Positions 4,414 to 60,906 of a stretch of DNA of 64,000 nt are shown here, piece after piece; the stretch's first letter is position 1, and the number at the start of each line of letters is the position of its first letter. The DNA comes from Vitrella brassicaformis CCMP3155 (taxonomy: Eukaryota; Protista; Chromerida): positions 62,001 to 126,000 of the forward strand of contig CDMY01000246.1 in NCBI GenBank assembly GCA_001179505.1, given 5' to 3'. The notes beneath the pieces were generated by a model. It saw nothing but the letters and a program-made list of their open reading frames with translations, was not told the DNA's origin and searched no databases. The position numbers and the translations under genes are program-made.

Positions 4414-4476
4414 ACATCCACACCCGCCACACATCACACGCCCACCCACCCCTCCCTCCCTGCCTCCCAACCTCAC

Positions 4477-28577: not shown

Positions 28578-28630
28578 CTGCAAGATCACACACACACGAA
28601 GACCATGACAAACAAACTCATGCCAGCCTC

Positions 28631-28930: not shown

Positions 28931-29108
28931 GCAGCCAATTGGCGGCAGCTCATCCGGCCACAGTCGAGCCGTCCTGAGAACAGCTCATCAGACGGCCAGC
29001 GCGAGCGGGTCAGCCGCTCCCCACAGGCCTGCAGGGGCTCAACGGCATAGCAGCTGTTGACAGGCCCACCGTCCATCTGGGAGGCCCAGCCAGGGCAACG
29101 CACTCGCC

Positions 29109-31471
29109 ATGTCGGCGTGCGAGGTTGACCTATACAACGACCCGACTCTCTATGACAAGTACGATGTCGTTGGTGAGCTGGGCGCCGGTTCGTTCGGCAA
29201 GGTGGTGCTGGTGTGGGAGAAGGGCAAAGGGCCGGCGGGCCGTCTGTTCGCGGCCAAGGTCCAGGACTTCTCGACCTGCTGGGAGGGTATCCCTGTCGAG
29301 GCGGTCCGCGACGTGGTGAGGTTGGGAGGCAGGGAGGGAGGGGTGGGTGGGCGTGTGATGTGTGGCGGGTGTGGATGTGTGTGTGGCTGTGAGTGATGCA
29401 GGCCATTCTGACTAAGATGAAGCACGAGAATGTGGCCAAGGTGTTCGAGGCCTGGGTGTCTGGCGAGGAGGGGCGGCTCTACATGGTCATGGAGTATGCC
29501 TCCGGCGGCGACCTCTTCAGGTTCCTCCGCCGCATGTTCCCACCGGTGAGCAAACCAGCAAACAGACCAAGGAAACCGACAGAGCCGACGGATGGACCCT
29601 CGTGTGTATGTGTGTACTCTGCTGTCATGCATTCGCGAATGCAGCGAAAGGTCAAAGTGGATCGGATTCTGCCGCCCGAGCAGGTCAAGCGCTATATGTT
29701 CCAGGTACCTGAGAGAGAGGCACACACAGCCATGGGATGCCCCCCCCTCTGCTGTGTGTGTTGGATTGGACAGCTGCTGTTGTCGTTGGCCCACGTTCAC
29801 TCGCACGACATCGCCCATCGCGACCTCAAACCCGCTAACGTGCTGCTCAACAAGAGCACCACACCTGGACGGTATGCGACATTCCCCCCCGCCCAAACGC
29901 GTCAACCAAACCCACACACCACACACCCACACACACGTTTGTCCGTTTACGTGTCTGTGTCCGTTTACGTGTCTGTGTGGATGCAGTGAGAAGTTGTTGT
30001 TAACCGATCTCGGCCACGGCCGTCTCCTGGACAGCCTCGGCGCCCCGCCCGTCCGACACACCGTAAACACCGCACTGACCCAGCGGCACCATGTGTCAGC
30101 GACACGTGTGAATCCGTTGTCCCATTCATCAGAACCCGACTGAGTTGGGGACGCCATCGTACAGAGCGCCGGAGGTGGTGCTGGGGCAGCGGACACACGG
30201 GACGGCCGTGGACATCTGGGCTGCTGGTATGAGGGCGGGAGGAGGGACTTACACATGGCACCTGCGGGATGCTTATTGTGTGTCCAATTGTGTCTGTCTG
30301 TCTGTCTGTCTGTGTGCAGGCTGCATATTGGCTGAGATGCTCGGATGCCGTCGCTCGCCCTTCGATGTGAGTCAGCCACTAGCCGGCTCACCGAGCCATG
30401 CACACACACACAGCCACACACAGCCACACACACACAGACAGAGATAAGTGTGTGTGTGTCTGTGTGTATGTGTGTTAGTGTCCTGTGGGTTCTGACTACG
30501 GCTCTCTGATTAAGATGATCGATTTGCTGGGGCTGCCGCCGCACAGCAGACTGCGGGTGCTCAACCTGCCGCTGTATAACTCACACGTATGGACACACGA
30601 AACCAAAGCACCACACACACCACACACACGAGTCCGTCCGGCTGTGTGTCTGTGTGTCTGTGCAGTACCTCATCCTGCCGCGGATTCCGCAGCGGAGCAA
30701 GGCCGAGGTGCGCGCCAAGCTCCAGAAGACCCTGGCCGAGGGCGAGAACGGCGTGACCATCACTGACGAGGAGTTCGACTTCCTCTATGAGTAAGTCAGA
30801 CCATCAGGCATCCTCCCTCCCTCCCTCCCTCCCTCCCATGGCTGCATTCCTCTGTCAACTGTGTGTGTCAGTCTGATTAGGTTTGACCCTGCTGAGCGTG
30901 TGACGGCGGCGGAGGCGGTCAACCACCCCTACTTTGACGACCTGGACAAACAGGTACCCAGCCAACCACACCACCAGAAGTGCACCTATCCCTCACACGC
31001 AGCCCTCTCCACCTCTCCTGGCCCATTCATTTGTGTGTGTCTGTGTGTGTGTGTTGGGTGCAGGAGTTTCAGCACTGGGCGGCTGACGTCGGCAGCCAGT
31101 TCATCCAGCCCTACACGCCGCACATCGAGGTGGAGCCGGTCTACGAGCCGCCCTCCATCGAGGCGGCCCACGCTCAGACACCTCCCCCTGCTACACCTCC
31201 CCCTGCTGCCATCGCTGCCGCTGCCGTAGTCCCTGCTCCTGCTGCTGTCCAAGAGCAGCCCCAGGACAACGGCCGCCGATACCACATGCGCCCCCGGCGC
31301 AATAAGAAGCGGGCGCCGCCGGGTGCTGTGGATGGCGGGGTGCAGCACGGCGAGGGCGGGGGTTTGGTGATGGCGGGCGAGGCCAAGAAGGGCCGTCTGC
31401 AGGCGGACAAGGGACAGGACGGTGGGGCTAATGAGGTGGAGAGGAAGCGCAAGAAGCGCAAGGTGGGCTAA
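29109..31471 (+). CDS. CDK-like (CMGC) Ser/Thr kinase, copy B, intact
   Basis: Exons join in frame at GT-AG sites: GAGSFGKV, FAAKVQ, EGIPVEAVRDV|AILTKMKHENV, HRDLKPANVLL, TDLGHGR, NPTELGTPSYRAPE, DIWAAG|CILAEML, YD-LIRFDPAER and KRKKRKVG-TAA. Confidence 0.9.
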
Positions 31472-32149
31472 CTGCCCCTCGCGCACACAAACGATAGCAA
31501 AAGTGTGAGTAGCTGTCGTACACTGAGCTGGGCGGTGGGGGGGATGTAGAGGGGGAGGGGAGGGGAGGGGACAATGGCCGTGCGTGATGGATGGATGGAC
31601 AAATGGATTGATGGATGGGCGAGACAGACAGACAGACGTGATGCATACAGACATGTACCTGGTGTGAATGAATGGGACCGACCGATCCACGGGCCGGCCA
31701 AGAGGCAATCAAACAAACAGGGGCAATGACACCTGAAAGGGTGCACGCGTGACGGTCGCCACTGAGAATTCAGGAGACAGGCGAGGCGATGCAAGGCTGA
31801 CAGCACTCAGGCAGGCACTAGAAACCAATCCTCACTGACGCACCCATCCATTTCATTGCACACGCACACGCATACGCATACCAGCGGCAGGAAGGAGTGC
31901 ATGAGGGAGGGACGTCTACCCATCCATGAGCAGCTGCCACCGCCCCGCCCGTCCATGACAGCATAGGAGGACCGAGGGGGCCGTGGGTGGGTGCTGTCTG
32001 TCTGTCTGTCAGTCTGTCTGTCTGTTCATCCGCAGCTGTCCACCATGCTATCAGCTGCTCCCTCACGCAGCATCGCCCCGAGCACCCACCCCCGAGCCCT
32101 TTGCCGGTCGATGTCCTCACCTACGGGAAGCCATTCATCTGAGGGATGG

Positions 32150-34901
32150 TCACGTGCGGCGCTCGACAACCAGCCCGTCGCCATCGAAGCTGAGCTTGTA
32201 CGGCCCGCCGCTGAAGTTGAGGGAGGCCTGCTCAGCCAGGAAACGCCGCTCGAAGTCGGTGCGCACGCCATTCTCGTCTTCAAATTCTACTATGGTCTTC
32301 TTGTGACCCTGTCATTAATTCCACCAAGAGGAGAGTGGGCACACACACACCACCCGGCAGCTGTCTGTGTGTGGTGTGTGTGCGGCGCACCTTGAGCTCG
32401 TTGCTGAATGAAGCCACCGAGGCCATCACGCGCAGGTAGAAGGTCTCCAATTCGTCATCCTCTACACCGCCTACAGCGAGTGGCGAGTGAACACAGACAC
32501 CACACAGAGATGTCATGTGTGCTGGTTCTCCCATCCCCCCTCACCATGCACGTGGATCGTCACGTCCTCGATCGGCGGCAGCTTGTCGTTGGTGCGCCGC
32601 CCCCACAGACACGGGCTCTGGTGGTCGTCAGCGAATTCATTCGTCAGCGGATTCAGATCCACCGCGAGGCTCCTCTCCCTCCCCTTGCTGACCAGCGCCG
32701 CCTGCAGCCGCTCGAGAAACATCCACACGTCACCAGCCGGCGCGTTCAGCAACTGCCCGTCCCCATCTGATCCCTTGATGTGTGACAGGTTGGGCATGTG
32801 CGAGGCGATCTCGACTGCCCGCTCCTTCTTGGCCTCATCGTCGAGGGCAACGTTCAGCAGCAGCAGGGTGTGGGCGGCTGGGAATGTGTCGTCAGTGATG
32901 ACTGCAGGGACGGCCTCGTCGAATCCCCTGTAGGCGACGATGTGGGCTGTCTTGGCGAGCTCGCCGACGAGCTTCTGGACAGTGGGGGTCCCGGTGCTGC
33001 TGCTGCGCGAGAGTATCTCGGCGTCGATCTGCCCATCCCTGTCACACTCACGCATAATTGGCTGTGACAGCGCCTCGGGATGCGCGACGGCGTCACTGCA
33101 GAGAAGCATCAAAAAGACGAGCACATCGGTATACGTCACGTGTACTTGGCCCTGTACTTGGCCCATTCCCCATCTGACGCGTTCTTACACGAGTTGTGCC
33201 GTGTTCTGCAGTCTGTTCCAGTAGCGTCTCCCAGTAGCTTGGTCTATCTCAAGCTCTCGAAGGGACCGGCTGACGCCCCTCGCCACCAGCACCTCACGCA
33301 GTCGGTCGATGTCGGCGGGGCTGCTATCCATCTCGACGCCGCGCAGTGTGCGAAGCGCTGCGAGCGACTTCCCGTCAGCGGGCAGCGCACTCAGCACACT
33401 GGCCGCATCGTCATCGTCCCACCGGAGCTCGAGCACCTCAATGGCCTCAAAGTCGCCCACCCATGCCCTCGCACCCTCCACCTCAGCTGAAAGGTCTCGA
33501 ATGATGAGCGTCTTGACAGCGGGCGTCAGCCACTGGCGGCCCTCGCGAGCCGAAAGGCACACGCCGGGTATGTTGTCGACGGTCTTGAGTGCCGGCAGGT
33601 GGACGGGGGCGGAGGGGGCGGCGGGCAGGGCAGATGACGGGGGAGGGTAGGGGATGTCGTTGCGAATGCTGTCGTCGAGCTCGACCTCCTCGAATGACAG
33701 CACCTCCAATGTGCCCTCGTCGGCCGACCAGCTGCCATCATCATCTTGCTCTGCCGCGGCAGCAGCTGTCCCCTCCCCGCCCTCCCTCTCTCGTCGTTTC
33801 TTCTCTGCGATTTCCGCCCTGCCGACGGCGTGTCCCTCCACTAATGCCACCTAGGTGCCGCGACACCAAGCCCATCGCCACTCGGGGTAGCGGCGCCTGA
33901 TCTCTCGCACGTTGGTCGCCCTCTTGCCCCATCTCTGCGCCACGGCCAGTGGCATGGTCCCCCACATGCGCCGCGCCTTGTCGTCCTTACAGTCTATGAC
34001 CAGGTTGGTGTAGTTGGCGGCCGACTGATGGTAGAGGGTCGTGCCGAGGGGCCGGCAGTGGCGGGCCAGCTCCCATGGCTGCAGGTGGCCGAGCACGTTG
34101 GAGAGCTCATCGCGGGACAGACGGAGGCGAGCCTAAGGCCGATACATATGACACACGTGTGACTGAATGCAAAAGGGATGCTCGTGTGCGTCATCACTCA
34201 CCGGTCCAATGTTGATGGGCAGCTGGCCACTCTCGTAGATCAAACGATAGGACCTCTCAGCAGGAGCAGCCTGAACCTCACACGCACACACCACATGCAG
34301 CAATCCTCTCTGCATAGAGCCCTCTGTGGTCGTGCAGGTGTACCTGTGGCTGCTCCTCTACGGTGTCTACTGGTGCCTCGGCGGGCGGCTCAGCGGCCGT
34401 CGCTATGAGGGCATCCACTGCAGTGGCCAGCAGGGGCTCCACTGTCGACAGCTGGGTGGCGGCAGCGTTGCACTGAGCAGTGAGGAGGGACAAGTGGACA
34501 CGCAGCTCGCGAGTCGAGGCCTGCATGGACAGCCAGAAAGCAAAACGCATGATTCATCAGAGAGAGAGGGGCGAGGCGAAGATAAGGATTCACACCACTG
34601 TGTCGTTATTCGCAGGCTCCGTCCGCTGCTTGATCTGCGTGAGGTGTTCATTAACCTGAGAGAGAGGAAGCAGTGGCAGCGGTGAGCGAGTGAGACCATG
34701 TATGGCTGCTGTGTTTGGCTGAAATACCTTTGTCTGAAGTTGCATGAGGCGTTTCAGGCTCTCGCTCGCCAACTGAGCATCCTCCCGAAGCTGCCGCTGC
34801 TGCATCAAACGACCAGGCAACACACACAGCAGCCGAAAGGTGAAAGGCGCTGCGTGTGTTTTAACGCCTGCTTTCATCTTCCTCACCTCGTTTGCATCCA
34901 T
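32150..34901 (-). pseudogene. Lineage-specific coiled-coil + F-box-like + LRR-like protein, copy 3 (single nonsense codon)
   Basis: ATG MDANE| at 34901. In-frame TAG at 33851-33853 replaces the Trp of WCRGTW conserved in the other three copies. Remaining exons are open and end VVERRT-TGA (32150-32152). Confidence 0.75.
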
Positions 34902-44859: not shown

Positions 44860-47511
44860 ATGGACGTCAATCAGGTGAGTTCAGACACACGAGCACAGAA
44901 GAGAGAACTCACGCGGAGAAAGGGCGCCACCACGCTTTTGGTTTCTCTGCGTTCAGTTTGTTGCGAATGCCCGTTCCGTGAAGGACAGCCTGGTGCTGCT
45001 CCTCGACCAAGATCCCGCCACCGTCGCCGCACAGGTGGGTTGCACTGACTGGCTGAGTAAACATTGACGAGGAGCCGCTCACTGTGTCCTTGATTGATGC
45101 AGGCGTCGTCGCCCGAGGCATGGCTTGAATCATCAGCTGGGCTCGATAGCCCCACTGCTGAGCACCCTCACGACCCGGCTCCAGCAGGGAGGGCCCACCC
45201 TCACCAGTGCTGTAGTTGTAGATGCACCCACGTCGACCACAGAGGCCGCTGCTGCAACGGGAGCCGCACACACAGAGCCACGGGTGGGGAGAGTTGGGGT
45301 GCGTGGCCGTCCGTCCGTGGTCATCTGTGCAGGGATCCGCCCTCTGCGTTGCGGGTGTCGTGTTGTATTGTTGCATTGCAGGCGCCTGTGAACACTGGTG
45401 GCCCATCGTTTCGTCGCATCCATACCACCGGCAACCCTCCACCGGTCAACGTTAACCAAGGACCGGTAAGGGCCACGCACAAGAATGAGTGTGATGCAAT
45501 CAGCTCATGGCGTGTTGCCGTCCTGTTGGTTGTCACTTCAGGCTCGTCGTCGTCTCTCGCGTGACGAATTGGCGAATGTGTTCGGCCACCTGCAGCCCTG
45601 GGAGCTGACGCGACACCGCCGGCCCCCTCGGCACGACCCTCGTCCATCAGTCGGCAGCCAACTACACCAAACTGGTCATCGACTGCAATAAGGGCGACAA
45701 GGCGCGGCCCATGTGGGAAGCCATTCCACTGGCCGTGGCGCACAGGTGGGGCAAGAGGGCGACCAACGTGCGAGAGATCAAGCACCGCCATCCTGAGATG
45801 CGATGGGCTTGGTGTCGCGGGACCTGGGTGGCCTTAGTGGAGGGACACACCATCGGCCGGGCGGCCATAGCAGACAAGAAACGACGAGAGACAGCTGCTG
45901 CCGCGGCAGCTCAAGATGATGATGGCAGCTGGTCGGCCGACGAGGGCACGTTGGAGGTGCTGTCCTTCGAGGCCGTCGAGCTCGGTTCCAGCATTCGCAT
46001 CCCCTACCCTCCCCCCTCATCTGATCTGCCCGCCGCCCCCTCCGCCCCCGTCAACCTGCCCGCACTCAAGACCGTCGACAACATACCCAGCGAGTGCCTG
46101 GCTGCTCGCGTGGGGCGCCAGTGGCGGACACCTGCCGTGAAGACGCTCATCACTCGAGGCTATTTCAGTGCGTCAGAGGAGGCTGTGAAGGCGTGGGTGG
46201 TCGACTGTGAGGCCATTGAGGTGCTCGACCCCGCCATTTTGGGCGCCGCCGATGCGGCGGATGTGCTGAGTGCGCTGCCCGCTCACGGGAAGTCGCTCGG
46301 GTCACTTCGCACACTGCGAGGCGTCTGGATCGGTAGCAGCTCCGCCGACATCGACCGACTGCGTGAGGTGTTGGTGGCGAGGGGGGTCAAGCGGTGGATC
46401 AGCGAGCTCAAGATCGACATGGGTGGCCATCTGGGGAACACAGACGAGGAATGGGAGAGACTGCAGAAGACCGCACAGCTCGTGTGAGGACAGATAAGAA
46501 GGGAGAGGGGTTCAACCCCAGATGTGCTCGTCTTTTCGTGGTGCATTTCTGCAGTGACGCTGTGGCGCATCGTGAGGCGTTGTCGAGGCGCATTGTGGGC
46601 AACATCATTTGGCGTGGATCCATCGACCTGGAGCTCATCTCCCGCACCAGCAGCAGCGGCACTCCCCTTATGCAGCGGATCATTGACAACTACGCCAAGG
46701 GAGCCCACGTCGTCGCCTACAGCGGAGGTGACGAGGCCATCCCTGCAGCCATCACCGACGACTCATTCCCAGCCGCCCACACCCTGCAGCTGCTGGACGA
46801 TGCCCTCGACGATGAGGCCAAGAAGGAGCGCGCCCTCAATATCGCCTCACACATGCCCAGCCTATCGTGTATCAAGACAGGAGACGGCGAGGTCGGGGAG
46901 GTGATGGACGCACCCGTCCGTGAGGTCTGGCGCTTTCTCGAGTGGCTGCAGGAGGCGCTGGTCAGCAAGGGGAGGGAGAGGAGCCTGACGCTGGAGATCG
47001 TCGTGTCGGCCGCCGACTTCACAGCACCCCTCAGCGGTGGCCGAAGCCCGGCGCTGTGGGGTCAGGGCAGTAACGCCAAACGGCCGCCGATCGAGAAAGT
47101 GTCCGTCTCTATTGATGGTGAGCGGTGACGGGAATAAGCAGGGACAGCCGTTGGCCGCGTCGTCGGTGCATGGCGATCATGTTTGTGCACTGTGTTCGTG
47201 TTCAATTTACCGCAGGCGATGTAGCGGATGACGAGTTGGAGAGATGGTACCAGCACGTGATGGCCTCGCTCAACTCATTCAACCACAAGCTCAAGGTGCG
47301 ACGCGCACCACCCACACACACAGATGACTCACTGCCGGACAATGAATGACAGGGCCACAAGAGGACCACTGTGTGCTTTGAGGACGACGCCGTGCGCACC
47401 TACTTCGAGCAGCGTTTCCTGGCTGAGCTGGCCGGACTCAACCTCAATGGCGGCCCGTACGAGTTCAGCTTCTCCGATTTCTCGCTGGTTGTTGAGCGGC
47501 TGGACACATAG
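44860..47511 (+). pseudogene. Lineage-specific coiled-coil + F-box-like + LRR-like protein, copy 4 (frameshifted)
   Basis: ATG GAC GTC AAT CAG|gtgagt (MDVNQ, cf. MDA/MDANE). ARRRLSRDELANVFGHLQPWELTRHRRP, then an extra C in the C5 run at 45623-45627 shifts the frame. Downstream exons are open and end VVERLDT-TAG (47509-47511). Confidence 0.75.
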
Positions 47512-48069
47512 GTAAGACGCAAAGCGTTTGCACGCCGCCGAAGTGCCTTGAGCGTCTGTCAGCCTGTGTGTGCTGTACTGTGCTGCGTCAGGTCGGCACA
47601 GAAGCATGACACGACACCGGTAGCTGGCCGTTGATGGGCGGATGGATGGATGGAGGGATGGCTGCTGCCGTGAGTGAGCAGCTTGATGGCGTGTACAGGC
47701 GGTGGACAGACAGTTAGGCACCTAGATCGACGGCTGGATGGAGGGGTACTTTACTCAGCCATCGCTTATGCCCACCACGGCCAAGACATGACAGGGCGGT
47801 CGGTGATTCTGCATGTGTAGCTACTTGTTTCCTTGCTCGATGCGTGCGTGCATTGCTGTTGGTGTCCATGACCTACCTGCCGCCTCACTGTTGTGTGAAT
47901 GAAAATGCATGCGTCTGTGCCTTCCCAAATCAAGGCGAGTCAGGGCCATGCAGGAAAGCGTGTTAGGTATTGCAATCCATTGGTCGTTAATGTACACACA
48001 CTGCACGTCACCCTGGTCCCTCACACCTCTCACACCACACCAGTCAATCACCACATCGCCCCCTATCAA

Positions 48070-51000
48070 TCACCTCCTCCCATGGTAGCTACCATCACGA
48101 TACCCCCCATCCCTCTCCCACCCATCCCTCTGCCGATATCTCCGATCACGGTTACCGCGCAAATCGCGGTCAGGTGTGTGGCGGCGCCTGACGTCACGGT
48201 CTTGCACGGGCTGCCGACAGGGCGGCGGGGCATAAAGCTCAATCGGCTCCTCCTGAACAACCACAAGAGACAGACAGATGCATCCATAGAGGTGGATGGA
48301 TGGCAGGCCTGATCTGTGTGTGTGTGTGTGTGTGTGTGTCTGTAGGTGATGAGTGCGACTGACCAGTCGTCGCAGCCGCTCTTCCTGGTCATCGCCTCCC
48401 CAGCTCGGGTGCTCATCAGGCCCGCCATAGTGAGAGCGGGTCTCCCGGTCCCGCGGCGCCCCTGCTGGCACATCCCTCCGGCCCCGTTCGCCCAGCTCAG
48501 GGTCGACCATGTCTCTTCCCGCTCTGCTCACGTTGGTGCGGGCCTCGTAGGTGTCCTCTGGTGGCCCGGGCTGATAGTCCTGCTGTGGATGGCGAACTTC
48601 ATGCCGGCGTTCCGACGACCTGTGCGTATGTGCCGAGCGGGCCTCATTACTGCGGCGGGGAGGAGGGAGGAGGGGAGGGATTGGAGAGTAGGAGCTGGAG
48701 GGAGAGTCATCGCTGTCCTGGTTGGGGGGAGACTCGATGAGGCTGAGAGTGCGGTCGACCATGCCGAGCATGGCATTCAGCTTGTGGATTTGCTCAACAA
48801 CAGCCGAGTTCTGCGGGCCCGATCTCAGGTTGCGCAACTGGTCCAATAGGAGCTCCCTGTGATACGCTGTCTCCAGTGGCTGACTATCCTGACGCGAGTG
48901 ACGAGAGAAAGACGAGCCCGCACTGTCGCGCCTGCCGAGGACAGGTGGTGGGTCAGGACGGTGGATCGCAGGTGGGTCAAGCAGGGGGTTGGCGGGCCGC
49001 TCGCGATGGTCACTGCCACGGCTGGGGCGGGCATCACGATCGTCGTAGTAGTCACGGCTGCGCCGGTCTTGCTCGCGACGGTCCTCCACCCGACCACCTC
49101 CCATCCGATATTCGTCACCCGGCAGCTCACGGTTTCGATAACCAGCACGACGGCGATCCATCGGCTCGCGGGGCTGGTAGGGGGGGTCTCGGTCATAGCC
49201 CCTCTCCCTCACATCGTCCCGTCTGCTATTATCATGTCTGTCGTAGTCCCTCTCCCTCTCGTCTCGCCGCTCACGGTCCCGATCGCGATCGTGAGGCGAC
49301 TCCCGCTGTCTCCTGCCATAGGCGCGGGTATCCTCGACTGGCCCCTGCTCCCTCCTCGCCTGCGCTCGTGTGTCCTCAGGTGGCATGTCACTCCGAGAAA
49401 CGACGCTTCTCTCAGGCGACTCCCAGTCATGCCGTTGGCTGCCATGCGAGCGGAGGTAGAAGTGATCGTGGCGGTCGTTGAGACGCCTCCCGTCTGCAGG
49501 ACCTGGCTCACGGTCACGCTCGGGTGCACGTCGAGTGGCCGTCGGTCCGGTGGGTTGAGTCAGCTGGGCAGCAGCTCCCCGCTCCGCGACGACGGATACC
49601 GACTCCAGCTCATCGGTGTTGACGGCAGACGGCGGCCCCCCTTGTCCCTGAGCTGGCGGCGACGGCCCTTGGAAGGGCATCTCCGGCATCTCTCCCAAGT
49701 CTCGCACCTCGGGCATATCTCGCACCATCTGTGGCGCCGGCTCTCGCCCCACCGCGGCATTCGAGTAGACCTCCCACACATCGTCAAGAGACTCGTAGTT
49801 GGCCGTGCATGGAGCGGCGGGGCCAGCTGTGGGCTGGTCTGGCGACACACTGAGATAGCCGGCCGGAGGCGACGCCGCCATGTCGAAAGACGAAGGGGCC
49901 GGCCTGGCCTCGGCTTTCGCCTTCGGCTGTGGAGACGGTGAGGAGTCCAAGCCGCTTCCACCTGCCGCCGCAGACACACCTGCTGCACGACCCTGCTGGC
50001 CCAGGCTGTGCCGAACGATTCGCCGGGCAGCAGCCTGGTCAACGCGAATAATGAGGGGCGGGGTAGCCCGGCTGGCAGAGGGGACTGCCTTGGGTGCAGG
50101 AGAAGGGCCATTGTCTGGCGCATCCTCAGACAATACCCGTGGCGGCAGGGGAGGCCTGCTGTTGCCGGGCGGCCCACGGGGGATGGGGGGACTTGGGGTC
50201 TGCTGCTCAAGAGAGAGGCGCTGCACCCTGTCGGAGAGGCGGTCACGCTCGAAGGCTGAACAGTAGGACCCAAACAGAGGGGCGGGAGAGCGCTCGGGCA
50301 GCTCTGATGTTAATTACCCCACACCAAGGAAGGCAAGCAATCCAAACCATCACCTAGGTGTGCGGCCAGCGTACCTTCATCAGGCTCGAACGCAGACATC
50401 GCCTCATCGTCGCGGATGCACTCAGACGGCGGGGGGCGAAAAGCGTTCGGGTTGTGCCGGTAGAAGTTCCTGTAGCGCTGCTTGAGCACCTTGAGCGAGT
50501 CACCGAAGAACACCCATGGGAACGACCGGAAGGTGTGCGAGCGATCTCCCGCCGTCGGCTCCGACGTGTCGCTGGTGGAGCGGGGGATGTTGGCATCGAC
50601 TCTGTGGGGTCGTGGATGATACGCTGCGATGAATGCCGCCGATGCGCGGACCAGCATGCGCTCATTGGCCCGCTGCCGCTCCTCATCGCTGGCACCGATG
50701 TCGCCCCCGTCGTCGAAGAGTCGTCGCTTCGTTGCGTCCACCTCGGCCCGCAAGGCATACGAGAGCTGAGATTGAAGGCAGAGGAATGGTGTGGTGGACA
50801 TGCAGTGGATTGAGGTACGTATTTGTGGGAGTTTGTGGCCATCTGACCTTGCTGGAGAGATCACGGTCCTTCTTTTGTCTGCCGTGGACGTGTGTGATGC
50901 ACCCGGTGAGCAGCTGCGGACAGAGAGACAGGGCGTCAATATTGGTGTAGTGTACCTATTGTATCATGTGTTGTGTCGTGTTGTGTGGGGTAGGTACCTC

Positions 51001-54000
51001 GCTCTCTTCCGCGATGCCGTACTGCTGCATGAGGTGCACCACCTGACACAGACATGACACACAGACATTCACCAAGCAGAGATGATGATGGTCAGCAAGT
51101 GAGGCTCTCCATCCGTCCCGCATGCCTGCCTGCCTGCCTGCCTGGATGGATGGATGGATGCCCACCTTTTGCCTCCATCGGTTGCATTCCATGCGCATCT
51201 CATCCACATGGTCCATGGCGTCCTTGTGCAGCACGTCGGGGTCGACCACACCCGGCGGCATCGGCTCATTCTCCGGCCAACGCCACTCATCCGCGTCCGC
51301 ATCCGCATCATCCTCCTGATCGCCCTCATCACCCCCACCTCCCAAAGCATCGGTCTGTGGCCTGTCAGGGCTCTCCGTGGCGGGCGGCGGCTGCTCGACT
51401 GTCTCGAAGAAGACGTCTCGCGGCATCCGCATCTGCGCCCCATCCACATACACCATGGGGGTGTCGTCATCGTCATGCTCCTGCCGGCCACTCATCCGGG
51501 CACGAACTCGGTTCTTCATCCAGCTGACGATTGCTGCTGCAGACGGCTGGTCTCGCCGCAGCAGGTAAGTCGCTGGGCCAGCACAAGCGGCGGCTGCTGG
51601 TGGGTCAGGTATGGTTATGTCGGGTGTGGGGGTGGTGGCGTCGCGCTGCTCGGGAGGGGATGACATGGCCTCCGACGTGTTGTCGCTGACGTCAGCGTCA
51701 CCCATCCGCCCAGCAGAGTCGTCGGGGGTGCGTTGCGACAGGCTGTTGCTACTGGGAGCGCTCGAGACGTGGGAGGGTCGTTGGGTGCGCGTGGGCGGCC
51801 GCGGTGGAGGTCGGCGGCGTGTGAGGGGTGTGGGGCGCTTGACGTAGAAGTCGGTTACTTGGTAGAGCTCGCAGAAGAAGAGGGACGCCTGGAGGCTGGT
51901 GAATCGGACGTCGTATACGTGACGCTGGTCGCTGGCCTCTGGCTGGAACGGCGTGATGGCGGGACGCCTGATGGGCGCACACAATAGGGTGAGGTGACAG
52001 AGGGGCGGGCGCAGTGGTTGTGGGTGGATATGTCGCTTACCCTCCCAGGGATGACCGCTGGTCGGTTCTCCGTCGGTCGATGCCGCTGATGGGCGTGTGC
52101 TCCCGCGTGATGCCGTGCAGGTGCAGGTATCGCGTCAGTGTCCTCCGCAACTCGTCCTGAGATCGCAATACAGACCACAAGCGCACACGTCCCCTTCTAC
52201 TCGCCGCTGTAGCGTGTTGCCCACGCACCTTGTCGAGGGAGCAGTGTTCGACGGTGACGGCGAATGTTTTGTTGTAGAAGTGCTCCATCTGGGAGATGGC
52301 GTCGAAGAAGAAACTACGGCTGTCAGAATCTGCATAACCACACACCACACCGGGGAGGGGATCAGCACCCCTCTCTGTCATTGGCATGAATGTGTGCACA
52401 CCTGTGGATGTTCGCGGGGCGCCCCGTGCGTCTGTGGGCTCCTTGACGTCGAAGGCCTGCAGGGTCTTCTCGTCGGCTGTGGCGTCCGACCTGGCTTTGA
52501 GCTCGCTCCAGCACACGTCGAAGCACGCCGCTGCCTTGACCGTCTGCGCACACACATCCACACACACATCCATCCATCCACCCTCAGGGGTGCACTAATG
52601 GCGTCAAATTCGTTCATCCATATGTGTTTGTGTGTGTGTGTGTGTGTGTCTTGACCTGGAAAAGGATATCGAGGTAGGACTGGTTTGGCCCTGCCCGTCT
52701 GATGAGGAGGTCGACGAAGGCCAGATCCTTCGACCTGATCCACTTGACGATCAGCCGCAGCTGCTCGCACAGCCGGGCACGGTTGAAGCCATCCTCTGAC
52801 ATACATGACGCACACAAACCAACAAAGGGAAATCCATGGATAAAGGATAAAGGGCAGTGGGTGAGGTGCACCGCTAGGCCTACCGGGAGCCAGGGGTGTG
52901 ATGCGCCTGACGCGGCCGATGTCGGGGCCGCCGACCAAGTCCTTGTCGAAGTTCTTGCTGTTCTTCTCACGCATCAGGCACGTGCCGTAGCTCTTGATCA
53001 GCGAATCCTCCTCTGCACCACACACACACACACACACACGGCCACATACAAAGGGCAGCGGTTGACACGTGTGTCCGTCTGCGTGCGTGTTTGTGCCGAC
53101 CGCCCGACTGACCAAGTGAGACACGGACAGTGGCCTTTCTGCCAGTGCTCTTCCACTTGATTTGCAGCTTCCCTCCTGGGATCCGCCTGATGAGCTCCGC
53201 AGCCACCTCGGGGCTGCTCACGGGCACCTGCGCCGACCAGCACTCCGACACATGACCCGGCGACACCTCCCGGGGGTACCCCCAGCACCTCTGCAAGCGA
53301 CCAACCAGCCATGTGTCGGTGGGGTGTTTGTGCGGCTGCCCTGCCATCCAGCCAGCGACTGACCGTGACTTGGTGTGTGGGTATGATGTTGTCTCCGCGG
53401 TTGAGGGGCAGGTCGAGTTTGCGGCGGAATTCTTTCTCGAGAATCTCCTCCAGCACAATGGGCCCGTTGTCGACGGGGATGTGGGACACAAACAGGTGGT
53501 CGCGCTGACCTGATTGGCGAACACACAAGCATACACACACAGGGGGGCCAGAGGGTCGGGTGAGGTGGTGTGCTGTGCTTACGGTCGCATGCTTCTGCAT
53601 GTCGAAACTCGTCCTCCACAGCGATCTGCAAGGGCTCGCTCGCCACCGACGTGTCGCTGAGACCCCCCTCGCGAAGCCACACCTGAAGGAAAGGCATACA
53701 AAGCCGACTGCCACCTGTCTGTTTGTGTGTGTGTGTGTGTTGGTGCGATGGATCCGCAGCTACCTGCACTTGGAACTGGACGGTCTCCATCGTCAGAGGG
53801 ATGGACAGCTCCTCTCGCGCGTCGCTTCTGCGTGTGTTGTACACGAGCTCTTCGAACGGCGCGTTGCACTGGTAGAGGTTGCTGAACATGTGGCTGTTGC
53901 TGGGGTGCCGGGGGTGCTGGCCGTCGATGAGCCCCCTGATGAGGATGCGGTGCCCCACCGCCCTCTGGGCAAGCCCGAAAGGGATCCGCCAGCTCAGCAG

Positions 54001-57000
54001 CACACCTCTCGCCACCGGCCGCTGGGTCGCCGGGTCGCGGACCAGCCATGGCTCTGGCGCCACCTCTGGCCGCACCGGACGGTGGCCTGCAGTTCACACG
54101 ACAGACACACAGAAATGCTGGTTGGCTGCTTGGGTCGCTGGTTGGTGTCGTGTTTGTGTGCTGACTGACCGGCGTCACTGATGGCGTTGTCGACTGTGTC
54201 AGCGAGGTAGAGCATCTCGCGGTATATCTCGCCGCACACCGAGATGCTGGGGAAGACGCGGCCCCGCTCCCAGTGGATCGGCTCGGCCAAAAAGTCGGCG
54301 CGGTCCTTGGCCGTCCACTCGACCGGCAGCTTCACACACCGACCTGTTTTGGCGCTGTCGACGGCCTCTGCGTGCAGGGCGGCGAGGCGAAGGCAGGCGG
54401 GATCGTTGGCCTGGCGCGACAAGGACACAGAGAGACATGCACGAGGGTGCTGAGTGTGGGCGGACCCGCCTGCCCGCCCGCCTGGTCACCTTGAGCTCGG
54501 CGTATATCTGGGGTTGGTAGACCATGTTGAGCCAGGCCACAGCTATCTTACCCAGGTTGTCGCTGCAGAAGTAATTGATGAAATACTCCTACACACACAC
54601 AGTGTCACCAACACATCCATCCATCGATCCATCCACCCACCCATGCGCCCACTTGCCTTGAGCAGCCTCTGTCTCTCGGCGGGGTTCTCAAGTGGGTTGT
54701 CGTCCCGCCCCGCCGCCCTCCCCTTCGGCCGCGGCTTGTAGTACTCCGCACCAGGGGGATTGGGCGTCGGCGGAATCAGGCGTTGGTCCCATATCACGTG
54801 GTACTGGTCACCTGACAGACACAAAGAGAGACGGAGAGAGAGCGATGCATCGGTGTGTCGGTCGCGCACCATCGAGGTCTGATCCGCTGAGCTCGTTTGG
54901 GTGCGGCCGCGAGCCCTTGACGGGGAAGACTATGACGTTGACGCAGTGTCGCAGCTCAGGTCTGTCGACCGCCTCGAAGACGCGTGTGTCGCCGGGGTCG
55001 AAGCAGGGGTTCTTGGACACATTCACCCTCCCTGATGACAGACAGACAGACACAGTGGACCATTACACAGACAGGTGCATCTGTGGGGTGTTGATTGTCC
55101 TCTCCCCCCCCTCCCCGCCCTCCACACACACACACCCCGACCGACCTGTGATGGTGTGTTCGTGTCCGTCTGGGTCCTTGACCCTCACGTGCACCTGCCC
55201 CTCCTCCAGTACTCGAGCCTCGCTCTCGTCAGACACACCATGCAGCACCGCACCTTGCTGTCTCACACAGACAGACAGCCAGACATCACCAAGCCCACGT
55301 AGCTGGCTGGATGGCTGTGGGTGCATGGGGCTGGCTGGCTGGGTGGCTGTGTGTGTGTGTATGTTGGCGCCTTACCTCTACGTATAGGTGTGTCTTTGCG
55401 AGGATGTCCTTGACGGTGAACCGGCGGATCTCGCTGAGGCACGCGCGCAGGAAGGGCTCGTCGCTCACGTTGAACCCCTGACGCAGAAAGTCCCCCAGCA
55501 GCGCCAAGAAGAAGTGATCGCGGCCGAGGTGAGCCAGCATACGCAGCGCCGCACCTGACACATGACACATGACACATGACACAGGGGAGGGAAGAGAATG
55601 CCAGCCATTGTGTGGCTGGGTCGGTGGGTGTGGGGTGCGCTGTCTACCGTTGTCGTCAAGCGCCTGTCGGATGTCTGTGAGCATCTCGTCTTTGAGTTGG
55701 TGGAAGACCTCTGGCTTGACGGCTCGGGTGAGGAGCAGCGTGATAACCTCCCTGTTGAGATGGAGGGGGATGAACCGCGCGTGGTCACAAGTCTCCAATT
55801 GCTGATGGGCGGAACGGTGGGACAGCACGAAAGCGAGCGTCTCCATGTGTGTGTGAGGGCGTGTGTGGTTGTGCCTACGTCATGGTGGGCTTTGAACTTC
55901 AGCTGAGACTGCCGGACCGCCATGCGGACACTGAACCACCGGGAAACAGCCCACTCAATGAAGGGACGGTGCCCCCTCACACACACACAGAGGTGTGGCT
56001 TACGGCTCTGGGTGTTTCTGCCTGAAGGAGGGGTCGAGTACGATCATGCCCTTGACACCGTTGAACCGAATCTGACGAACACAGAACACCACACCAGGCC
56101 AAGGGGACACTTATGACGTGACGGACGATGTGCGGCAGGTAGGTACACACCTGGAAGGCGCAGGGCACATAGTCGATCTTGAGCTCCGTCGCCACCTCCT
56201 TGGCAACACTCCTGTCGCAATACCCACACCCATCTGACACAGCCAAAGCCAAGAAGTCAGGAGGGGTCATCCATCCACTCATCCACCCCGCAACGGACCG
56301 GTAAATTCGTAGTCTCCTCTGTCTGGGTCGTCTGGGTCGATGGGCGCGGTGATGTCCTTCTCGACTACCCACTCCTCTGGCGCGATCCTGATGGCCTGGC
56401 GGGTGGCGCTGAAGCACTGACCCTGACGCGCCGCATACTTGCCTGCAGGTGGGGGTGGGTGACGCACACACACACACAGATGGGTGGGCCAGTCGTATGT
56501 GTGTGTATGTTTACGGCCAGACCAGGCATGTCGATGCTCGTGAAGTCGCCCATGAAGGACTCGATGTAGACGAACTCCAGCTGCTCATCTGAATCAACCA
56601 CACACACACACACACGACCACATCCACCCAGCTGCTCGTGTGAGTGCTGGCTACCCCACCCCCCCATCCCACCATGCTCCTACCTGGCCTGAACATCCAG
56701 CAACCGCAGTTGCGCAACTGCGATGACGAGTAGGCCAGCAACTCATACGGCGGCAGACAGGCCAGGCTGATCCCTGAAGGAGCGAGAGAGGGAGGGAGGG
56801 AGGGAGGGACAACACCAGCACCTCGGACGCCCAACGTACCCCGTGTGGACATATTTCGAGAGTCTCTACCTACCGTCATCGAGTACCTTCTTCATCCGGT
56901 GCGTGACGACTTCGTCCAGCGACGCCTCGTAGAAGAGACGGTCACAGTCCTCCTCTGCAACGAGTGACGGGCAGCAACACAGGAGAGGGCCGTGAATGTG

Positions 57001-60000
57001 CGGCATCAGTTGTGTCTTTCCTGTTCGCCTCTGCTGACCGACGAACGCGACGCGAAGAAAGTTGTCGGTCTTGTCGCGGAACCGACGCAGCACACTGACG
57101 AGAAGACACACACATAGACACAGACAGGGAGTGTCTGTGTCTGTGTGTGGATGTGGCTATGTGTTGTGTTGTGTCGTGTTGCATACCGGTTGGACTGCTC
57201 GACGAAGGGCCCCCTGACGTACATCTTGAGTGGCGTGACGTCGACGTGCAGGATGCGCATGCAGTGCTCGGGGTAGTCCATGAGGGTGTGGACCAGGCCC
57301 AGTTGCCGCTGACCACGGGCCGCGATCCTCTCAAACTCTGAGAACCCGAAACACCACACACAGACAAAGACAAGAGAGAGAGAGATGCAATACGCGCGTT
57401 GGTCTGTTTGTGGTGGCAGCCAGCAGACCTACTACCTTGTTTCGGGTTCATGATGGGCTGGCCGATCTTCTCCATCGCCTGGTACAACACACAGACACAC
57501 TCCATCCTCCCCTCCCTCCCATTTGTGCGTTGGGCGGTGGTGTGCCGACCGTCAGACAGTAGATTTTGACCATGGGGTCGAGCTGGGCGGCCAGCAGGCA
57601 GTCGTTCACGAACGATGGGTCAAGCTGACCACACAATGAATGGCCACAGAAGGGATCGCATCCATCCATCCATCCATTCCCCTCTCTCTTGAACACCGAC
57701 CCACCGCATTGGAGCCCTGCAGCAGCCCTGCATGTATGACGCGCACAAACACAACAAACACCAGACAATGATTGGTACAGGAGTCGGTGCGTGACGAATT
57801 GGTGCTCACCCACCGTTTGTGACCAGCACTTGGTATGAGGCGAAGAGCAGGAAGCCGTGCTCCCCACTCGTCAGCAGCTCCATCGACACACTACAAATCA
57901 TCAACACACCACACCACAAACCCAACACACGTGTGTGTGGAGACGTGGCCGCCGAGCCGTTTACTTGTCGTCCAGGCCACCGACCGGTCAATGCCCGTGA
58001 AGATGTCGTTGACGGATGGGATCTGCAGAGGGGGTGCGTCGGGCGGGAGGTCCTCCTGCTCGGCCCGCGGCAGAAAGGTGGGCCTGTCCTGGTGCAAGTG
58101 GACGTAGCGGATGTCCTCGTACGGACACGACGCAATCCCACCAGACCTGCAGGTGGGGTGGTGAATGAGGGAACCGTGCGTGTCGTGTCGTGTCGTGCTG
58201 TGTTGGGTGCGGTCGGTGTGGTGTGGTGTGGTCGGTGCGGTGTATATGGCCGAGCGCAACTACCCGTTGTCGCTAGTGGGCAGCAGCCCTGCCTTCATGA
58301 GCGACGGTGCGATGTTCTGCTCGAAATGGGCCTGCAGCCATCCATCAAACACACACCGCACCAAGCATGTATGGATGCGTCTGTGTGTGTGTGGGGGGGT
58401 GTCAGGCGGGGTCTTCGTCTTACGTGTCGCTTGGGACAGACCACCGTGATGCACCACGAGGCCTCCAGGGCCTGACAAACACACACATTGCTGTGTGAGT
58501 CAAGGACCACAGGACTTTCTGTCTCCTTTTGCCCTGCCCACCGTGACGTCCTTGGTGCAGGGGTGGACCGTGACGCCGTCGCCCCACTTGCCACCTTTGC
58601 CCTTGCCCTTGCCCTTGCCGGCCGCTGGGTGGGCGTCGTCGCCCCAATCGCTCCCCCACACGCCGTCGTCGGGTCGGCCGCTCGGCCGTGAGGACGACGA
58701 AGAAGACGCCCCCATGTTGCCTCGGGGCTTCTTCGGGCCGCGTGTCTGGTCGAACCCACCCTACACACACGAACAGAGAGACAGTACGGGGCGTGTGTGG
58801 GAGTGTGGGAGGGTCTGTATGTGTGTTGTACCGGTGGCTGGTAGCCGTCGTGTCCTGTGGTGGTGGTGGTGGATATGATCCAGGGGTCGGTCATGCGGCT
58901 GAAGTCGACCCGGTTGTTGGGGCTCTCATCGGGGCGGTCCGACTCGTCCGGGCTGAGGTGGCGGAAGCCGTCGCCGACGTCACGATAGGACAACTGCACC
59001 GATCGCACCAATGGATAGAGGGACGGACACACGCACACAAGAGGTGTGTGGTGTGGCGTGGTGCGTGTGTGCGGGGTGGTACCTACCCTGGGTGCTCTCG
59101 AGAAGAGGATGACCAGGTGGATGTCGTCATCTTGGTCGGGGGCACTGGCAGGGACCAGGAGCACACGCAGCTGGACATGCTTGAAGGGCCACTCGAGCCG
59201 GTAGCACCGGTAGTCCTTGCTGACCACACATACACAGGGAAGGAAGAGGATCACAGCACCATCCATCCATCCACTCATCCGGCGAGGATGTGTGTGTGCT
59301 GTGTCTGTGTGTCTCTGTGTCTGTGTGTCTGTGTGTCATGCTCACGTGAATGTTATCCGCAGCATCCTCTGGGTGAGGAGGAAGAGGCAGCCGACCACGC
59401 CACGCGTCAAGGCGTCACAGTCCTCCTCATAGTCGTGCTGCACTAAGAGCGAATTCTGCACGCACACACACACACACACACACATGGACGGCCAGCTGGA
59501 CGGACGGATGAATGGATGGTTGGACAGCTGGACGGTGGTGTGCTTACGGCTTTCCGCAATTGTTTCAGCTCCTTGTACGTCTCTATAAGTTTTTCCTTGA
59601 CCTGCGCACACACACCACACACCAGCCCACCAACTGCCCCCCTGCTACGACACACGCCCGCAGGTACTCAGTTGTCACTCAGTCACTGACCATGTTGCCG
59701 AAGTACAGCCGCGTGCCGAAGAGCGCCGTGGTCCGGTGGGAAGGCTTGGATGCGTCCAGGTCGACCGACAGCATGGCCTGCAGCGGGCCCTCACGCTGGT
59801 GGGTCTCCTGGCAGGCGTGCTCTGCCCTGTCACGGCTGTAATACCGGATGACCGCCACGCCATCGCCCGACATCCAGATCCTGGCAGGCACCAAAAAAGC
59901 GTTCCAACTTCCCCTCCCTCTCTGCTCTGCGTGTGTGCGTGTGTGCGTGTGTGCGTGTGCGTCATCCAAGAGAGTACTCACTCATCGACGAGTCCATGGT

Positions 60001-60373
60001 TCTCATAGGTCTGCCGCAACTCCCATGCCGTCGTCCGTGGGTTCAGCCCTTTGACCACCAACGTGCCGGAAGACTGCTCGAGGCCCTGCACACGTCAACA
60101 GGCAGCCAAGGGGCAGACAGAATATGGATGGAAATTGCCCTTCTCTCAGATCACAAATCAGTGTCGGTGTGCTCACCCACCTCATGCTCCTTGCGCCAGC
60201 TCGTCTGACAGGCTCTGCATGGGCCGCCCTTGACCAGAAACACAGATCCTGCATGACACAGAGACGTCATGGTCCATGGCGCGCACACACACACACAGAC
60301 GGGCATGAGGAGCATCCCATCCCGTAGGTGAGATCTCACCGTCGATGTCGGCGTACTCATGGTCCGCTGCCAT
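48070..60373 (-). CDS. Eukaryotic cellular RNA-dependent RNA polymerase (RDR/QDE-1 family) with N-terminal RRM, large internal insertion and long C-terminal low-complexity tail
   Basis: VTPLKMYVRGPFVEQSNR|VLRRFRDKTDNFLRVAF, GKYAARQGQCFSAT, DGCG...AFQ|IRFNGVKG, LHLNREVITLL, SKNPCFDPGD, LRHCVNVIVFPVKGSRPHPNELSGSDLD|GD (catalytic DxDGD split by an intron), LAALHAEAVDSAKTG, LMQQYGIAEESEV|LLTGCI, RASAAFIAAYHP and RSFPW. The 3' end (48070) and first exon (ATG 60373) are less certain. Confidence 0.93.
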
Positions 60374-60906
60374 GATTCAATCAACCACAGAAGAGAACCA
60401 ACATCTACTCATCAGTTCGACTACGGGGCAGCACGATGCAGTGACGGCTAGCTGAGGAGGCCCGTGTGCTGGCGTGCTTCTCTTCGGCTCACGAGAAAAA
60501 CCCAAAAGCAGACGCGATCGCAGTTCAGTCGAGCTCGCAAATGCGATCTCAAAACCTCCAGGCTTTTTTTCGCGCCAGAGCTTCCAACGACGCACGAGAT
60601 GATGATGCACAACAGCGAGAACACAGGTTCGTGGCGTGACGAGACGTGGTGACCCGCTGTCTGGCAAGATGGTCAAGTAGCCGCTCCCAAGCAGTGGGGG
60701 TGGCGGACAGCCGCAGCAGGGCGTGGAGATTTGTTCCCACGTCGCCGTCGAGAAGACAACGGCGTCAAGACACGTCATTCGGCGTTTCCGACTGCCAGCG
60801 GATCTGTGAGTGGTGGTGGTAACTGAGAGAGGCCACGTTGCCGTCCGTGTGCAGCACCCAGCGTCCCTCCCTCCCTCCCCTCCCTCCCCCCTGTGCGATA
60901 TCCCGC

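What the first reader, a model, noticed from the sequence alone, without database searches (positions are those of the whole stretch)
58575..58666. Putative Argonaute-hook WG/GW motifs built into the RdRP
Seen: an in-frame exon (phase 0 at both ends) in the disordered N-terminal region encodes RPDDGVWGSDWGDDAHPAAGKGKGKGKGGKWGDG, with three WG dipeptides in about 30 Gly/Asp/Lys-rich residues. The C-terminal tail adds HPSWGGDD (about 48400) and RDGWERDG (about 48120). Established: WG/GW repeats in G/D/K/S-rich disordered sequence bind the AGO PIWI domain (GW182/TNRC6, S. pombe Tas3, plant NRPE1 CTD). Inference: this RdRP may dock directly on Argonaute, collapsing RITS/RDRC-type coupling into one polypeptide.
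Basis: partly seen in the sequence, partly recalled or inferred. Interest (0 to 1): 0.72.

Follow-up and report, generated by a model that had tools for sequence, protein, structure and literature searches.

The report
Tryptophan-glycine loop in algal RdRP
One of the three RNA-silencing RNA polymerases of the alga Vitrella brassicaformis carries an expressed, floppy surface loop with three Trp-Gly pairs that looks like a short Argonaute docking site, but its relatives lack the tryptophans and binding is untested.

Summary
The gene lies on the minus strand and is CEL96798.1, a 2754-aa cellular RdRP of Vitrella brassicaformis with 47 exons. Exon 9 (58542-58760, 219 nt, phase 0/0) is included in a spliced cDNA contig and encodes W320, W324 and W344, each followed by Gly.

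The segment is not an N-terminal tail. It is a paralogue-specific insert in a surface loop predicted to be disordered (pLDDT 23-29), just after a motif shared with plant RDRs.

With my re-implementation of the Karlowski 2010 WG/GW matrix it scores 37.55 half-bits (cut-off 6.99). That is the best of 142 RdRPs and the best in the six-frame window, but only just above compositional noise in this GC-rich DNA (35.7, 29.6).

Against the hook reading:
- None of the Trp is conserved in the two Vitrella paralogues or in the Chromera RdRP.
- The DNA shows fresh slippage repeats.
- No Argonaute sequence could be examined.

A functional AGO/PIWI hook remains a plausible, unproven candidate (about 0.35-0.4), level with neutral low-complexity growth.

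The scan had already noted this same stretch in another window, and similar WG clusters on the HEN1, TUTase, GTSF1-like and helicase genes of this genome.

The parts
48070..60508 (-). RdRP gene (CEL96798.1, 2754 aa). CDS 60373..48073 in 47 exons; 5' UTR reaches at least 60508.
   Evidence: Exact mapping of P0001 onto the window; cDNA contig X5 record 17 reaches 60508; identity of P0001.
58542..58760 (-). Exon 9 (residues 286-358), the WG exon: 219 nt, phase 0/0.
58575..58712 (-). Ago-hook-like WG domain, residues 302-347 (GASSSSSSRPSGRPDDGVWGSDWGDDAHPAAGKGKGKGKGGKWGDG); dos 37.55 half-bits.
   Evidence: matrix from PMC2910046.
58644..58658 (-). W320-G and W324-G inside the acidic stretch DDGVWGSDWGDD.
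58584..58586 (-). W344 (KWGDG). Its 18-nt unit repeats the W324 unit 60 nt away, in phase (15/18 identical).
58587..58619 (-). (Gly-Lys) run, residues 333-343, encoded by a perfect hexamer tandem repeat (GGCAAG x 3.8).
58722..58736 (-). PKKPR (residues 294-298), a string that looks like a nuclear localisation signal.
   Evidence: Sequence; fit to the K-K/R-x-K/R consensus is from general knowledge and was not tested.
58880..58897 (-). Conserved R-x-x-D-P-W motif (R264, D267, P268) at the N-terminal anchor of the loop. It aligns with the plant RDR motif 'RxTDF'.
58424..58471 (-). Exon 10, ALEASWCITVVCPKRH: the conserved strand (W364, C370, P371, R373) at the C-terminal anchor of the loop.
59793..60061 (-). 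N-terminal RRM (residues 43-98, split by an intron).
   Evidence: PF00076, 20.9 bits; Foldseek matches to RRM domains.
54216..57239 (-). RdRP domain PF05183 (residues 557-1139, many exons). The catalytic DLDGD (residues 987-991) lies at 54807-54879, across an intron.
48400..48402 (-). W2682 (HPSWGGDD) in the C-terminal R/D/E-rich tail; dos 8.41.
48118..48120 (-). W2739 (RDGWERDG) near the C-terminus; dos 7.36.

Best explanation
Exon 9 encodes a paralogue-specific, fast-evolving disordered insert in a surface loop of the RDR2-like N-terminal region of one Vitrella RdRP.

The mechanism I think most likely is inferred, not shown. The acidic W-G-x-x-W-G...W-G cluster would act as a short, weak, multivalent tryptophan motif (an 'Ago hook'). 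It would tether this RdRP to an Argonaute/PIWI protein, or to the small-RNA complexes and granules built around one, so that RNAs targeted by small RNAs are copied into dsRNA. In plants the same job is done through the separate GW-bearing cofactor SGS3, and in fission yeast through Tas3 of RITS.

Shown: the exon is real and expressed, the loop is predicted to be disordered, and its composition and score are hook-like. Inferred: every step that involves Argonaute.
For: - The exon is real and spliced in frame.
- Residues 235-363 have pLDDT 23-29 and no secondary structure, and are flanked by strands 231-236 and 364-370.
- Three of three W are followed by G (p = 0.0105 given the exon composition).
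- W density in the loop is 3 in 88 residues, against 4 in about 715 in the same protein's C-terminal tail.
- dos is 37.55 half-bits against the published cut-off of 6.99. This is the best of 142 RdRP-family proteins (next best 11.06) and the best in the six-frame window.
- The domain has no L/I/M/Y/C, the residues the published matrix disfavours.
- It has an adjacent acidic patch, as required for SGS3-AGO1.
- GW proteins bind a PIWI-clade Argonaute in another alveolate, Tetrahymena.
- AGO Trp pockets couple to an RdRP pathway in plants.
- Leads only, not tested here: other scan notes report Argonaute/PIWI genes in this genome, and WG clusters on its HEN1, TUTase, GTSF1-like and DEAD/KH helicase genes.
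Against: - None of the three Trp, and neither C-terminal Trp, is conserved in paralogues P0002 and P0023 or in Chromera P0015. P0002 has an equally long loop with no W at all.
- There are only three W, and two of them lie in an in-phase 18-nt repeat unit, so they are not independent.
- The K-G run is a perfect hexamer microsatellite, so the segment is young and prone to slippage.
- In this GC-rich DNA, arbitrary reading frames reach dos 35.7, 29.6 and 28.4. Six domains score 25 or more in 107,571 residues.
- Karlowski et al. warn that Gly-rich segments are the main false positives.
- No Argonaute of this organism was examined.
- No binding data exist, and no paper on chromerid RNAi was found.
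Confidence: 0.37

Rival explanations
1. Neutral low-complexity growth. This loop is a tolerated insertion site in chromerid RdRPs. In this paralogue it expanded by replication slippage in G-rich DNA, and the TGG-GGN pairs are by-products with no Trp-specific function.
For: - Loop length varies from about 20 to about 88 residues, with unrelated composition among the four chromerid RdRPs.
- There is a perfect (GGCAAG)x3.8 repeat, and in-phase 18-nt and 9-nt repeats carry the WGD and DGV units.
- No Trp is conserved.
- Comparable scores arise in non-coding frames of the same window.
- Three W within 25 aa somewhere in a protein with 32 W is not unusual in itself (p = 0.57).
Against: - W is otherwise sparse in this protein's disordered parts.
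- All three W sit in the same W-G context (p about 0.01).
- The segment is the top scorer in the window and a clear outlier among 142 RdRPs.
- It is kept in the mature mRNA.
Confidence: 0.35
2. The loop works without Argonaute. It could be a flexible basic and aromatic arm (PKKPR, a Ser run, the K-G run, Trp 'stickers') that provides nuclear import, non-specific RNA binding near the polymerase, or partitioning into RNA granules.
For: - PKKPR and (GK)n lie in the same exon.
- Paralogue P0002 has GRGGGRAGR (RGG-like) at the aligned position of the K-G run, so a Gly-basic element is the only feature shared between the two long loops.
- Aromatic residues in disordered regions also drive condensation, which is why the SGS3 study needed W-to-Y controls.
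Against: Pfam finds nothing in the exon, and the language-model look-alike search gave no usable hit. The acidic residues that directly flank the Trp argue against simple RNA binding by that part.
Confidence: 0.2
3. The Trp cluster is a docking motif for a partner other than Argonaute, for example another subunit of an RdRP complex such as a helicase, a nucleotidyl transferase or Dicer.
For: Only general: RdRPs act in complexes, and Trp-based linear motifs are used by many systems (general knowledge). Nothing specific was found.
Against: No known non-AGO motif fits. W-acidic kinesin motifs need W followed by D/E, whereas here W is followed by G.
Confidence: 0.08

Closest known systems
Arabidopsis SGS3 N-terminal IDR (GW/WG dipeptides) binding the Trp pockets of AGO1 to promote RDR6-dependent siRNA amplification (bioRxiv 10.1101/2025.10.18.683247)
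   Same: A few Trp (five in SGS3, three here), often next to Gly, in a disordered region with an adjacent acidic patch. The logic is the same: link a small-RNA-loaded Argonaute to an RdRP.
   Different: In plants the hook sits on a separate cofactor. RDR6 itself was screened and has no Trp in disordered regions. The SGS3 Trp and acidic patch are conserved across about 200 species; here the Trp are in one paralogue only. Binding here is untested.
S. pombe Tas3 (RITS) Ago hook and RITS-RDRC coupling
   Same: A short hook with few Trp, rather than a long repeat platform, linking Ago1 to the RdRP complex (general knowledge; cited via Till et al. 2007).
   Different: Tas3 is a scaffold, not the polymerase, and there is no sequence homology to it.
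[quoted passage not shown]
   Same: They show that GW-Argonaute docking operates in alveolates and with PIWI-clade proteins.
   Different: They are many-repeat GW proteins without polymerase activity. Ciliates are only distantly related to chromerids.
Plant NRPE1 CTD, SPT5L and animal GW182/TNRC6 WG/GW platforms
   Same: The composition rules (W, G, S, N, A, D favoured; L, I, M, Y, C avoided) are met, and the dos score is above the cut-off.
   Different: Those platforms carry 10-40 motifs with dos above 90-150. This one has three motifs and dos 37.55 ('medium' class, which includes known Gly-rich false positives).
Arabidopsis RDR2 (PDB 7eu0/7eu1/7roz/7rqs) and other alpha-clade RDRs
   Same: The catalytic core aligns at E about 1e-86. 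The N-terminal region gives RDR2 as the top Foldseek hit. The loop anchor motif R-x-x-D aligns with plant RxTDF.
   Different: Plant RDRs have a short loop of about 8 residues at this site and no WG cluster. The best dos among the other 141 RdRP-family proteins is 11.

Membership tests
Eukaryotic cellular RdRP (RDR, PF05183) | PF05183 domain above the gathering score | tested here: met
   E = 2.1e-146, 489.5 bits, residues 557-1139. Individual exons also hit the family.
Eukaryotic cellular RdRP (RDR, PF05183) | Catalytic DxDGD loop | tested here: met
   SGSDLDGDQYHVIW, residues 984-997, aligned to the RDR chain 7w82_A.
Ago hook / WG-GW Argonaute-binding platform | Two or more Trp next to Gly in an intrinsically disordered region | tested here: met
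   W320G, W324G and W344G. pLDDT is 23-29 with no secondary structure.
Ago hook / WG-GW Argonaute-binding platform | Domain composition score (dos, Karlowski 2010) above 6.99 half-bits | tested here: met
   37.55 half-bits for residues 302-347, from my re-implementation. The ics score was not computable and the cut-off was calibrated on Arabidopsis. Background in this window reaches 35.7.
Ago hook / WG-GW Argonaute-binding platform | Trp spaced far enough apart (about 10 or more residues) to reach two PIWI pockets | tested here: inconclusive
   W324-W344 = 20 residues; W320-W324 = 4. The spacing rule is from memory of the Ago2-TNRC6 structures and was not checked here.
Ago hook / WG-GW Argonaute-binding platform | Trp (and acidic patch) conserved in orthologues | tested here: not met
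   There is no Trp in the loop of P0002, P0023 or Chromera P0015. The tail motifs are not conserved either.
Ago hook / WG-GW Argonaute-binding platform | Trp-dependent physical binding to the PIWI domain of an Argonaute | not testable with these tools
   Needs pull-down or co-IP with W-to-A and W-to-Y controls.
Ago hook / WG-GW Argonaute-binding platform | A partner Argonaute with Trp-binding pockets in the same organism | not tested
Other scan notes report such genes, but I did not check them.
CCCH zinc finger | Conserved C-x(4-15)-C-x(4-6)-C-x3-H ligands | tested here: not met
   C354-x11-C365-x4-C370-x3-H374 exists in P0001, but the first Cys and the His are replaced in the paralogues and in Chromera. 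There is no Pfam hit. The segment is a conserved beta-strand plus helix of the RDR N-terminal region.

The most novel reading that the evidence does not exclude
This RdRP carries its own Argonaute/PIWI hook, so that in Vitrella the amplifier polymerase docks directly on the small-RNA effector without an SGS3- or Tas3-type adaptor. It would be one instance of a wider design in this alga, where several small-RNA enzymes (RdRP, HEN1, a TUTase, a GTSF1-like factor, a DEAD/KH helicase) are each tethered to PIWI through short WG clusters.
Probability: 0.3. Interest if true: 0.75.

Novelty: new variant of a known kind. Interest (0 to 1): 0.45.

Why it matters
How a small-RNA-loaded Argonaute recruits an RdRP is a central and only partly solved question in RNA-silencing amplification. 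In plants the link was recently traced to GW dipeptides on the cofactor SGS3 and the Trp pockets of AGO1. An RdRP with the hook built in would be the simplest possible version of that coupling. It would give a compact, testable system: one loop, three Trp.

It would also open the undescribed RNAi machinery of chromerids, the free-living relatives of apicomplexan parasites. No paper on chromerid RNAi turned up in the library searches.

If the loop is only neutral low-complexity sequence, the case is a useful warning that WG clusters arise easily in GC-rich, Gly-rich genomes.

Tried and rejected
1. M301 (MGASSSS...) as the start codon, with possible N-myristoylation: rejected. The cDNA contig and the deposited protein join exon 9 in frame to eight upstream exons that start at ATG 60373.
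2. CCCH zinc finger across exons 9 and 10: rejected, because the ligands are not conserved.
3. W-acidic kinesin-type motif: rejected, because W is followed by G, not D/E.
4. Blind enumeration of exon chains from the contig gaps timed out or was too ambiguous. It was replaced by reading the splice sites directly and by the exact match to P0001.
5. Searches for near relatives or independent cDNA-derived ORFs covering the loop found nothing beyond the protein itself:
   - word-based search of residues 130-520 and of residues 1-560;
   - JGI metagenome/transcriptome scan by protein;
   - the same scan by an exon 8/9-or-8/10 junction pattern.
   Exon skipping therefore could not be tested.
6. The ESM Atlas look-alike search for residues 296-352 gave no usable hit.
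7. Literature searches found no paper on chromerid RNAi and no paper describing an RdRP with its own GW hook.
8. The Trp pockets of the organism's Argonautes could not be examined, because no AGO sequence was obtainable from any tool.

Full report
**What is there.** The stretch lies on the minus strand, inside a large multi-exon gene. Translated pieces of the region hit Pfam RdRP (PF05183) and contain the catalytic ...SGSDLDG|DQYHVIW... motif split by an intron. A HMMER search of the 1.84-billion-protein library with one core exon returned a 2754-aa protein, P0001. Its N-terminus is identical to the exon model I had read from the splice sites. P0001 is CEL96798.1 / A0A0G4EIH3, 'RNA-directed RNA polymerase' of Vitrella brassicaformis CCMP3155. 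It maps exactly onto the window as 47 exons from 60373 to 48073. I joined the exons only inside a local script, to check the translation. All later searches used the deposited protein by its id, or single exons by reference.

**Check of the observation.** Exon 9 is 58760-58542: 219 nt, 73 codons, acceptor AG|GGT, donor ACG|GT, phase 0 at both ends. Its product is GGFDQTRGPKKPRGNMGASSSSSSRPSGRPDDGVWGSDWGDDAHPAAGKGKGKGKGGKWGDGVTVHPCTKDVT, residues 286-358.
- Run X5 has no record of its kind, but it yields spliced contigs and so behaves as cDNA.
- Its record 17 (1821 nt) covers 58541-58759 with no differences and abuts 58831-58993 directly (record positions 830/831).
- The same record continues upstream to 60508. 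Downstream it reaches 58144-57985 with a 117-nt gap, which fits exons 10 and 11 (48 + 68 nt, plus one ambiguous base).
- Two DNA data sets from different studies (X1, X2) show the same exon sequence.
- The two C-terminal motifs are real: W2682 at 48402-48400 and W2739 at 48120-48118.

One correction is needed: this is not an N-terminal tail.

**Anatomy.** P0001 has these parts in order:
- an N-terminal RRM (PF00076, 20.9 bits; Foldseek RRM hits);
- a beta-rich region whose best structural match is Arabidopsis RDR2;
- the PF05183 core at residues 557-1139 (E about 1e-86 to 1e-88 to solved plant RDR structures);
- a long insert noted by an earlier report of this scan;
- a C-terminal tail of about 700 aa rich in R/D/E.

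An AlphaFold2 model of residues 1-560 was built from a shallow five-sequence alignment (mean pLDDT 52). It gives confident strands at 171-236 and 364-370 and a helix at 374-387. Residues 235-363 have pLDDT 23-29 and no secondary structure.

In alignments, the loop starts after the invariant R264..D267-P268 motif, which lines up with the plant RDR1/RDR2 motif 'RxTDF'. It ends before the invariant T358-A359..E361..S363-W364...C370-P371. Plant RDRs have about 8 residues at this site. The Vitrella paralogue P0023 has about 20, Chromera velia P0015 about 45, Vitrella P0002 about 86 and P0001 about 88. Exon 9 is therefore a lineage-specific expansion of a surface loop that is variable in chromerid RdRPs.

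**Is it more than chance?**
- Given the exon's own composition (23% Gly), all three W being followed by G has p = 0.0105. Given the whole-protein composition, 3 or more G-adjacent W within 30 aa has p = 0.004. Three W within 25 aa somewhere in the protein is not unusual in itself (p = 0.57).
- I re-implemented the published WG/GW domain score (matrix and dec = 8.6 from PMC2910046). Residues 302-347 score 37.55 half-bits. The published cut-off is 6.99 and the 'medium' class is 25-150.
- The two C-terminal motifs score only 8.4 and 7.4.
- Among the 142 RdRP-family proteins fetched, the next best domain scores 11.06.
- In a six-frame translation of the whole window, the exon is the top domain. 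Arbitrary frames still reach 35.7, 29.6 and 28.4, and six domains score 25 or more in 107,571 residues.
- The paper itself warns that Gly-rich segments are the main false positives, and its P-values are for Arabidopsis.

The cluster is thus clearly unusual for an RdRP and for this protein. It is not far above the compositional noise of this GC-rich genome.

**Conservation.**
- P0002, the paralogue with an equally long loop, has poly-Q, an acidic run and GRGGGRAGR, but no Trp.
- P0023 has GGGQGG. The Chromera loop has no Trp.
- The only feature the two long loops share is an acidic stretch followed by a Gly-basic element.
- The C-terminal tails do not align, and their W are not positionally conserved.
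- Further searches for closer relatives or other cDNA-derived ORFs found nothing.

At the DNA level the K-G run is a perfect (GGCAAG)x3.8 microsatellite. The W324 and W344 units lie in an 18-nt repeat (15/18 identical) exactly 60 nt apart, and a 9-nt unit (GACGGCGT-) is repeated as well. The segment is therefore young and grows by slippage or duplication, and two of the three WG are not independent events.

**What is known elsewhere.**
- Trp in disordered regions, often next to Gly, binds hydrophobic pockets on the PIWI domain of many Argonautes, as in TNRC6, NRPE1, SPT5L and Tas3 (introduction of bioRxiv 10.1101/2025.10.18.683247).
- That preprint shows that five Trp plus an acidic patch in the SGS3 IDR, together with AGO1 pockets 1 and 3, are needed for RDR6-dependent siRNA amplification. 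W-to-Y mutants are defective too, which argues for a specific pocket contact rather than condensation.
- The same study screened RDR6 itself and did not retain it as a candidate with Trp in an IDR.
- I found no paper describing an RdRP with its own hook and none on chromerid RNAi.
- Other notes of this scan report Argonaute/PIWI and Dicer genes in this genome, and WG clusters on its HEN1, a TUTase, a GTSF1-like protein and a DEAD/KH helicase. These are unchecked leads. They come from readers who flag WG mainly when the protein is RNAi-related, so they are not independent support.

**Reading.** The loop meets the sequence-level criteria of a short hook: disorder, WG context, a favoured composition without L/I/M/Y, an acidic patch, and a 20-residue spacing between W324 and W344. 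It sits on an enzyme for which docking to Argonaute makes mechanistic sense. It fails the conservation criterion, has only three Trp, and is made of fresh low-complexity repeats. Neither the partner's pockets nor binding could be tested.

My estimates are:
- 0.37 for a Trp-dependent tether to AGO/PIWI or its complexes;
- 0.35 for neutral low-complexity growth;
- 0.20 for an Argonaute-independent role of the basic and aromatic arm (the NLS-like PKKPR, the K-G run aligned to an RGG-like run in the paralogue, granule partitioning);
- 0.08 for another partner.

The two C-terminal motifs add little. They are single, unconserved W in an R/D/E-rich tail with marginal scores.

**Verdict.** If real, it would be a new variant of a known kind: an RDR-family polymerase with a built-in Ago hook, doing in cis what SGS3 or Tas3 do in trans. 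The decisive work is a W-to-A/W-to-Y pull-down with the alga's Argonautes, inspection of their Trp pockets, and a proteome-wide enrichment test.

Noticed in passing
window 535-8000, 27000-34140 and 45520-46990: Large dispersed repeats. 535-2205 matches 31654-29955 (inverted, 90% identity, 1.7 kb). 2720-4113 matches 4414-5844 (direct, 94%). 5843-6932 matches 45520-46596 (84%), and there are several more pairs. One copy ends about 1 kb 3' of the RdRP gene. This could be a transposon family or a segmental duplication; I did not identify it.
   Followed up: partly
window 57186-57341 (exon for residues 524-574) and paralogue P0023/P0003: A second DNA contig with 4 differences covers 57222-57341 in X1, X2, X5 and X6. 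The paralogue CEL96779.1, on the same 150-kb contig, is nearly identical to P0001 over EFERIAARGQRQLGLVHTLM.YPEHCMRILHVDVTPL, although the proteins are only about 50% identical elsewhere. This suggests local gene conversion between the two RdRP paralogues.
   Followed up: partly
window 58354-58471 (end of exon 9 and exon 10): A C-x11-C-x4-C-x3-H spacing that looks like a CCCH finger spans the exon 9/10 junction. The first Cys and the His are not conserved in the paralogues, so it is most likely a coincidence within a conserved strand.
   Followed up: yes
window 48073-50304 (exons 46-47): The C-terminal tail of about 700 aa is extremely rich in R/D/E, with runs such as RDRDRERRDERERDYDRHD. It is unalignable with the tails of the paralogues and of Chromera. 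Its function is unknown.
   Followed up: no
introns throughout 48000-60500, e.g. 59250-59330, 58380-58420: Introns of this gene are packed with (CA)n/(TG)n and GGATGGATGG runs close to the splice sites. These give recurrent 'HTHTHT' and 'GWMDGWMD' strings in off-frame translations and caused repeat-related joints in the read-laying output.
   Followed up: no
L001 (JGI 3300017148, 9959 nt) and L002 (Logan SRR646408): Intron-less transcript contigs encode the paralogue as a 1476-aa ORF. On L001 separate ORFs follow, including the RdRP head domain, whereas the genome annotation gives 1669 aa. Either the transcript assembly has frameshifts or the gene model of this paralogue needs revision.
   Followed up: no
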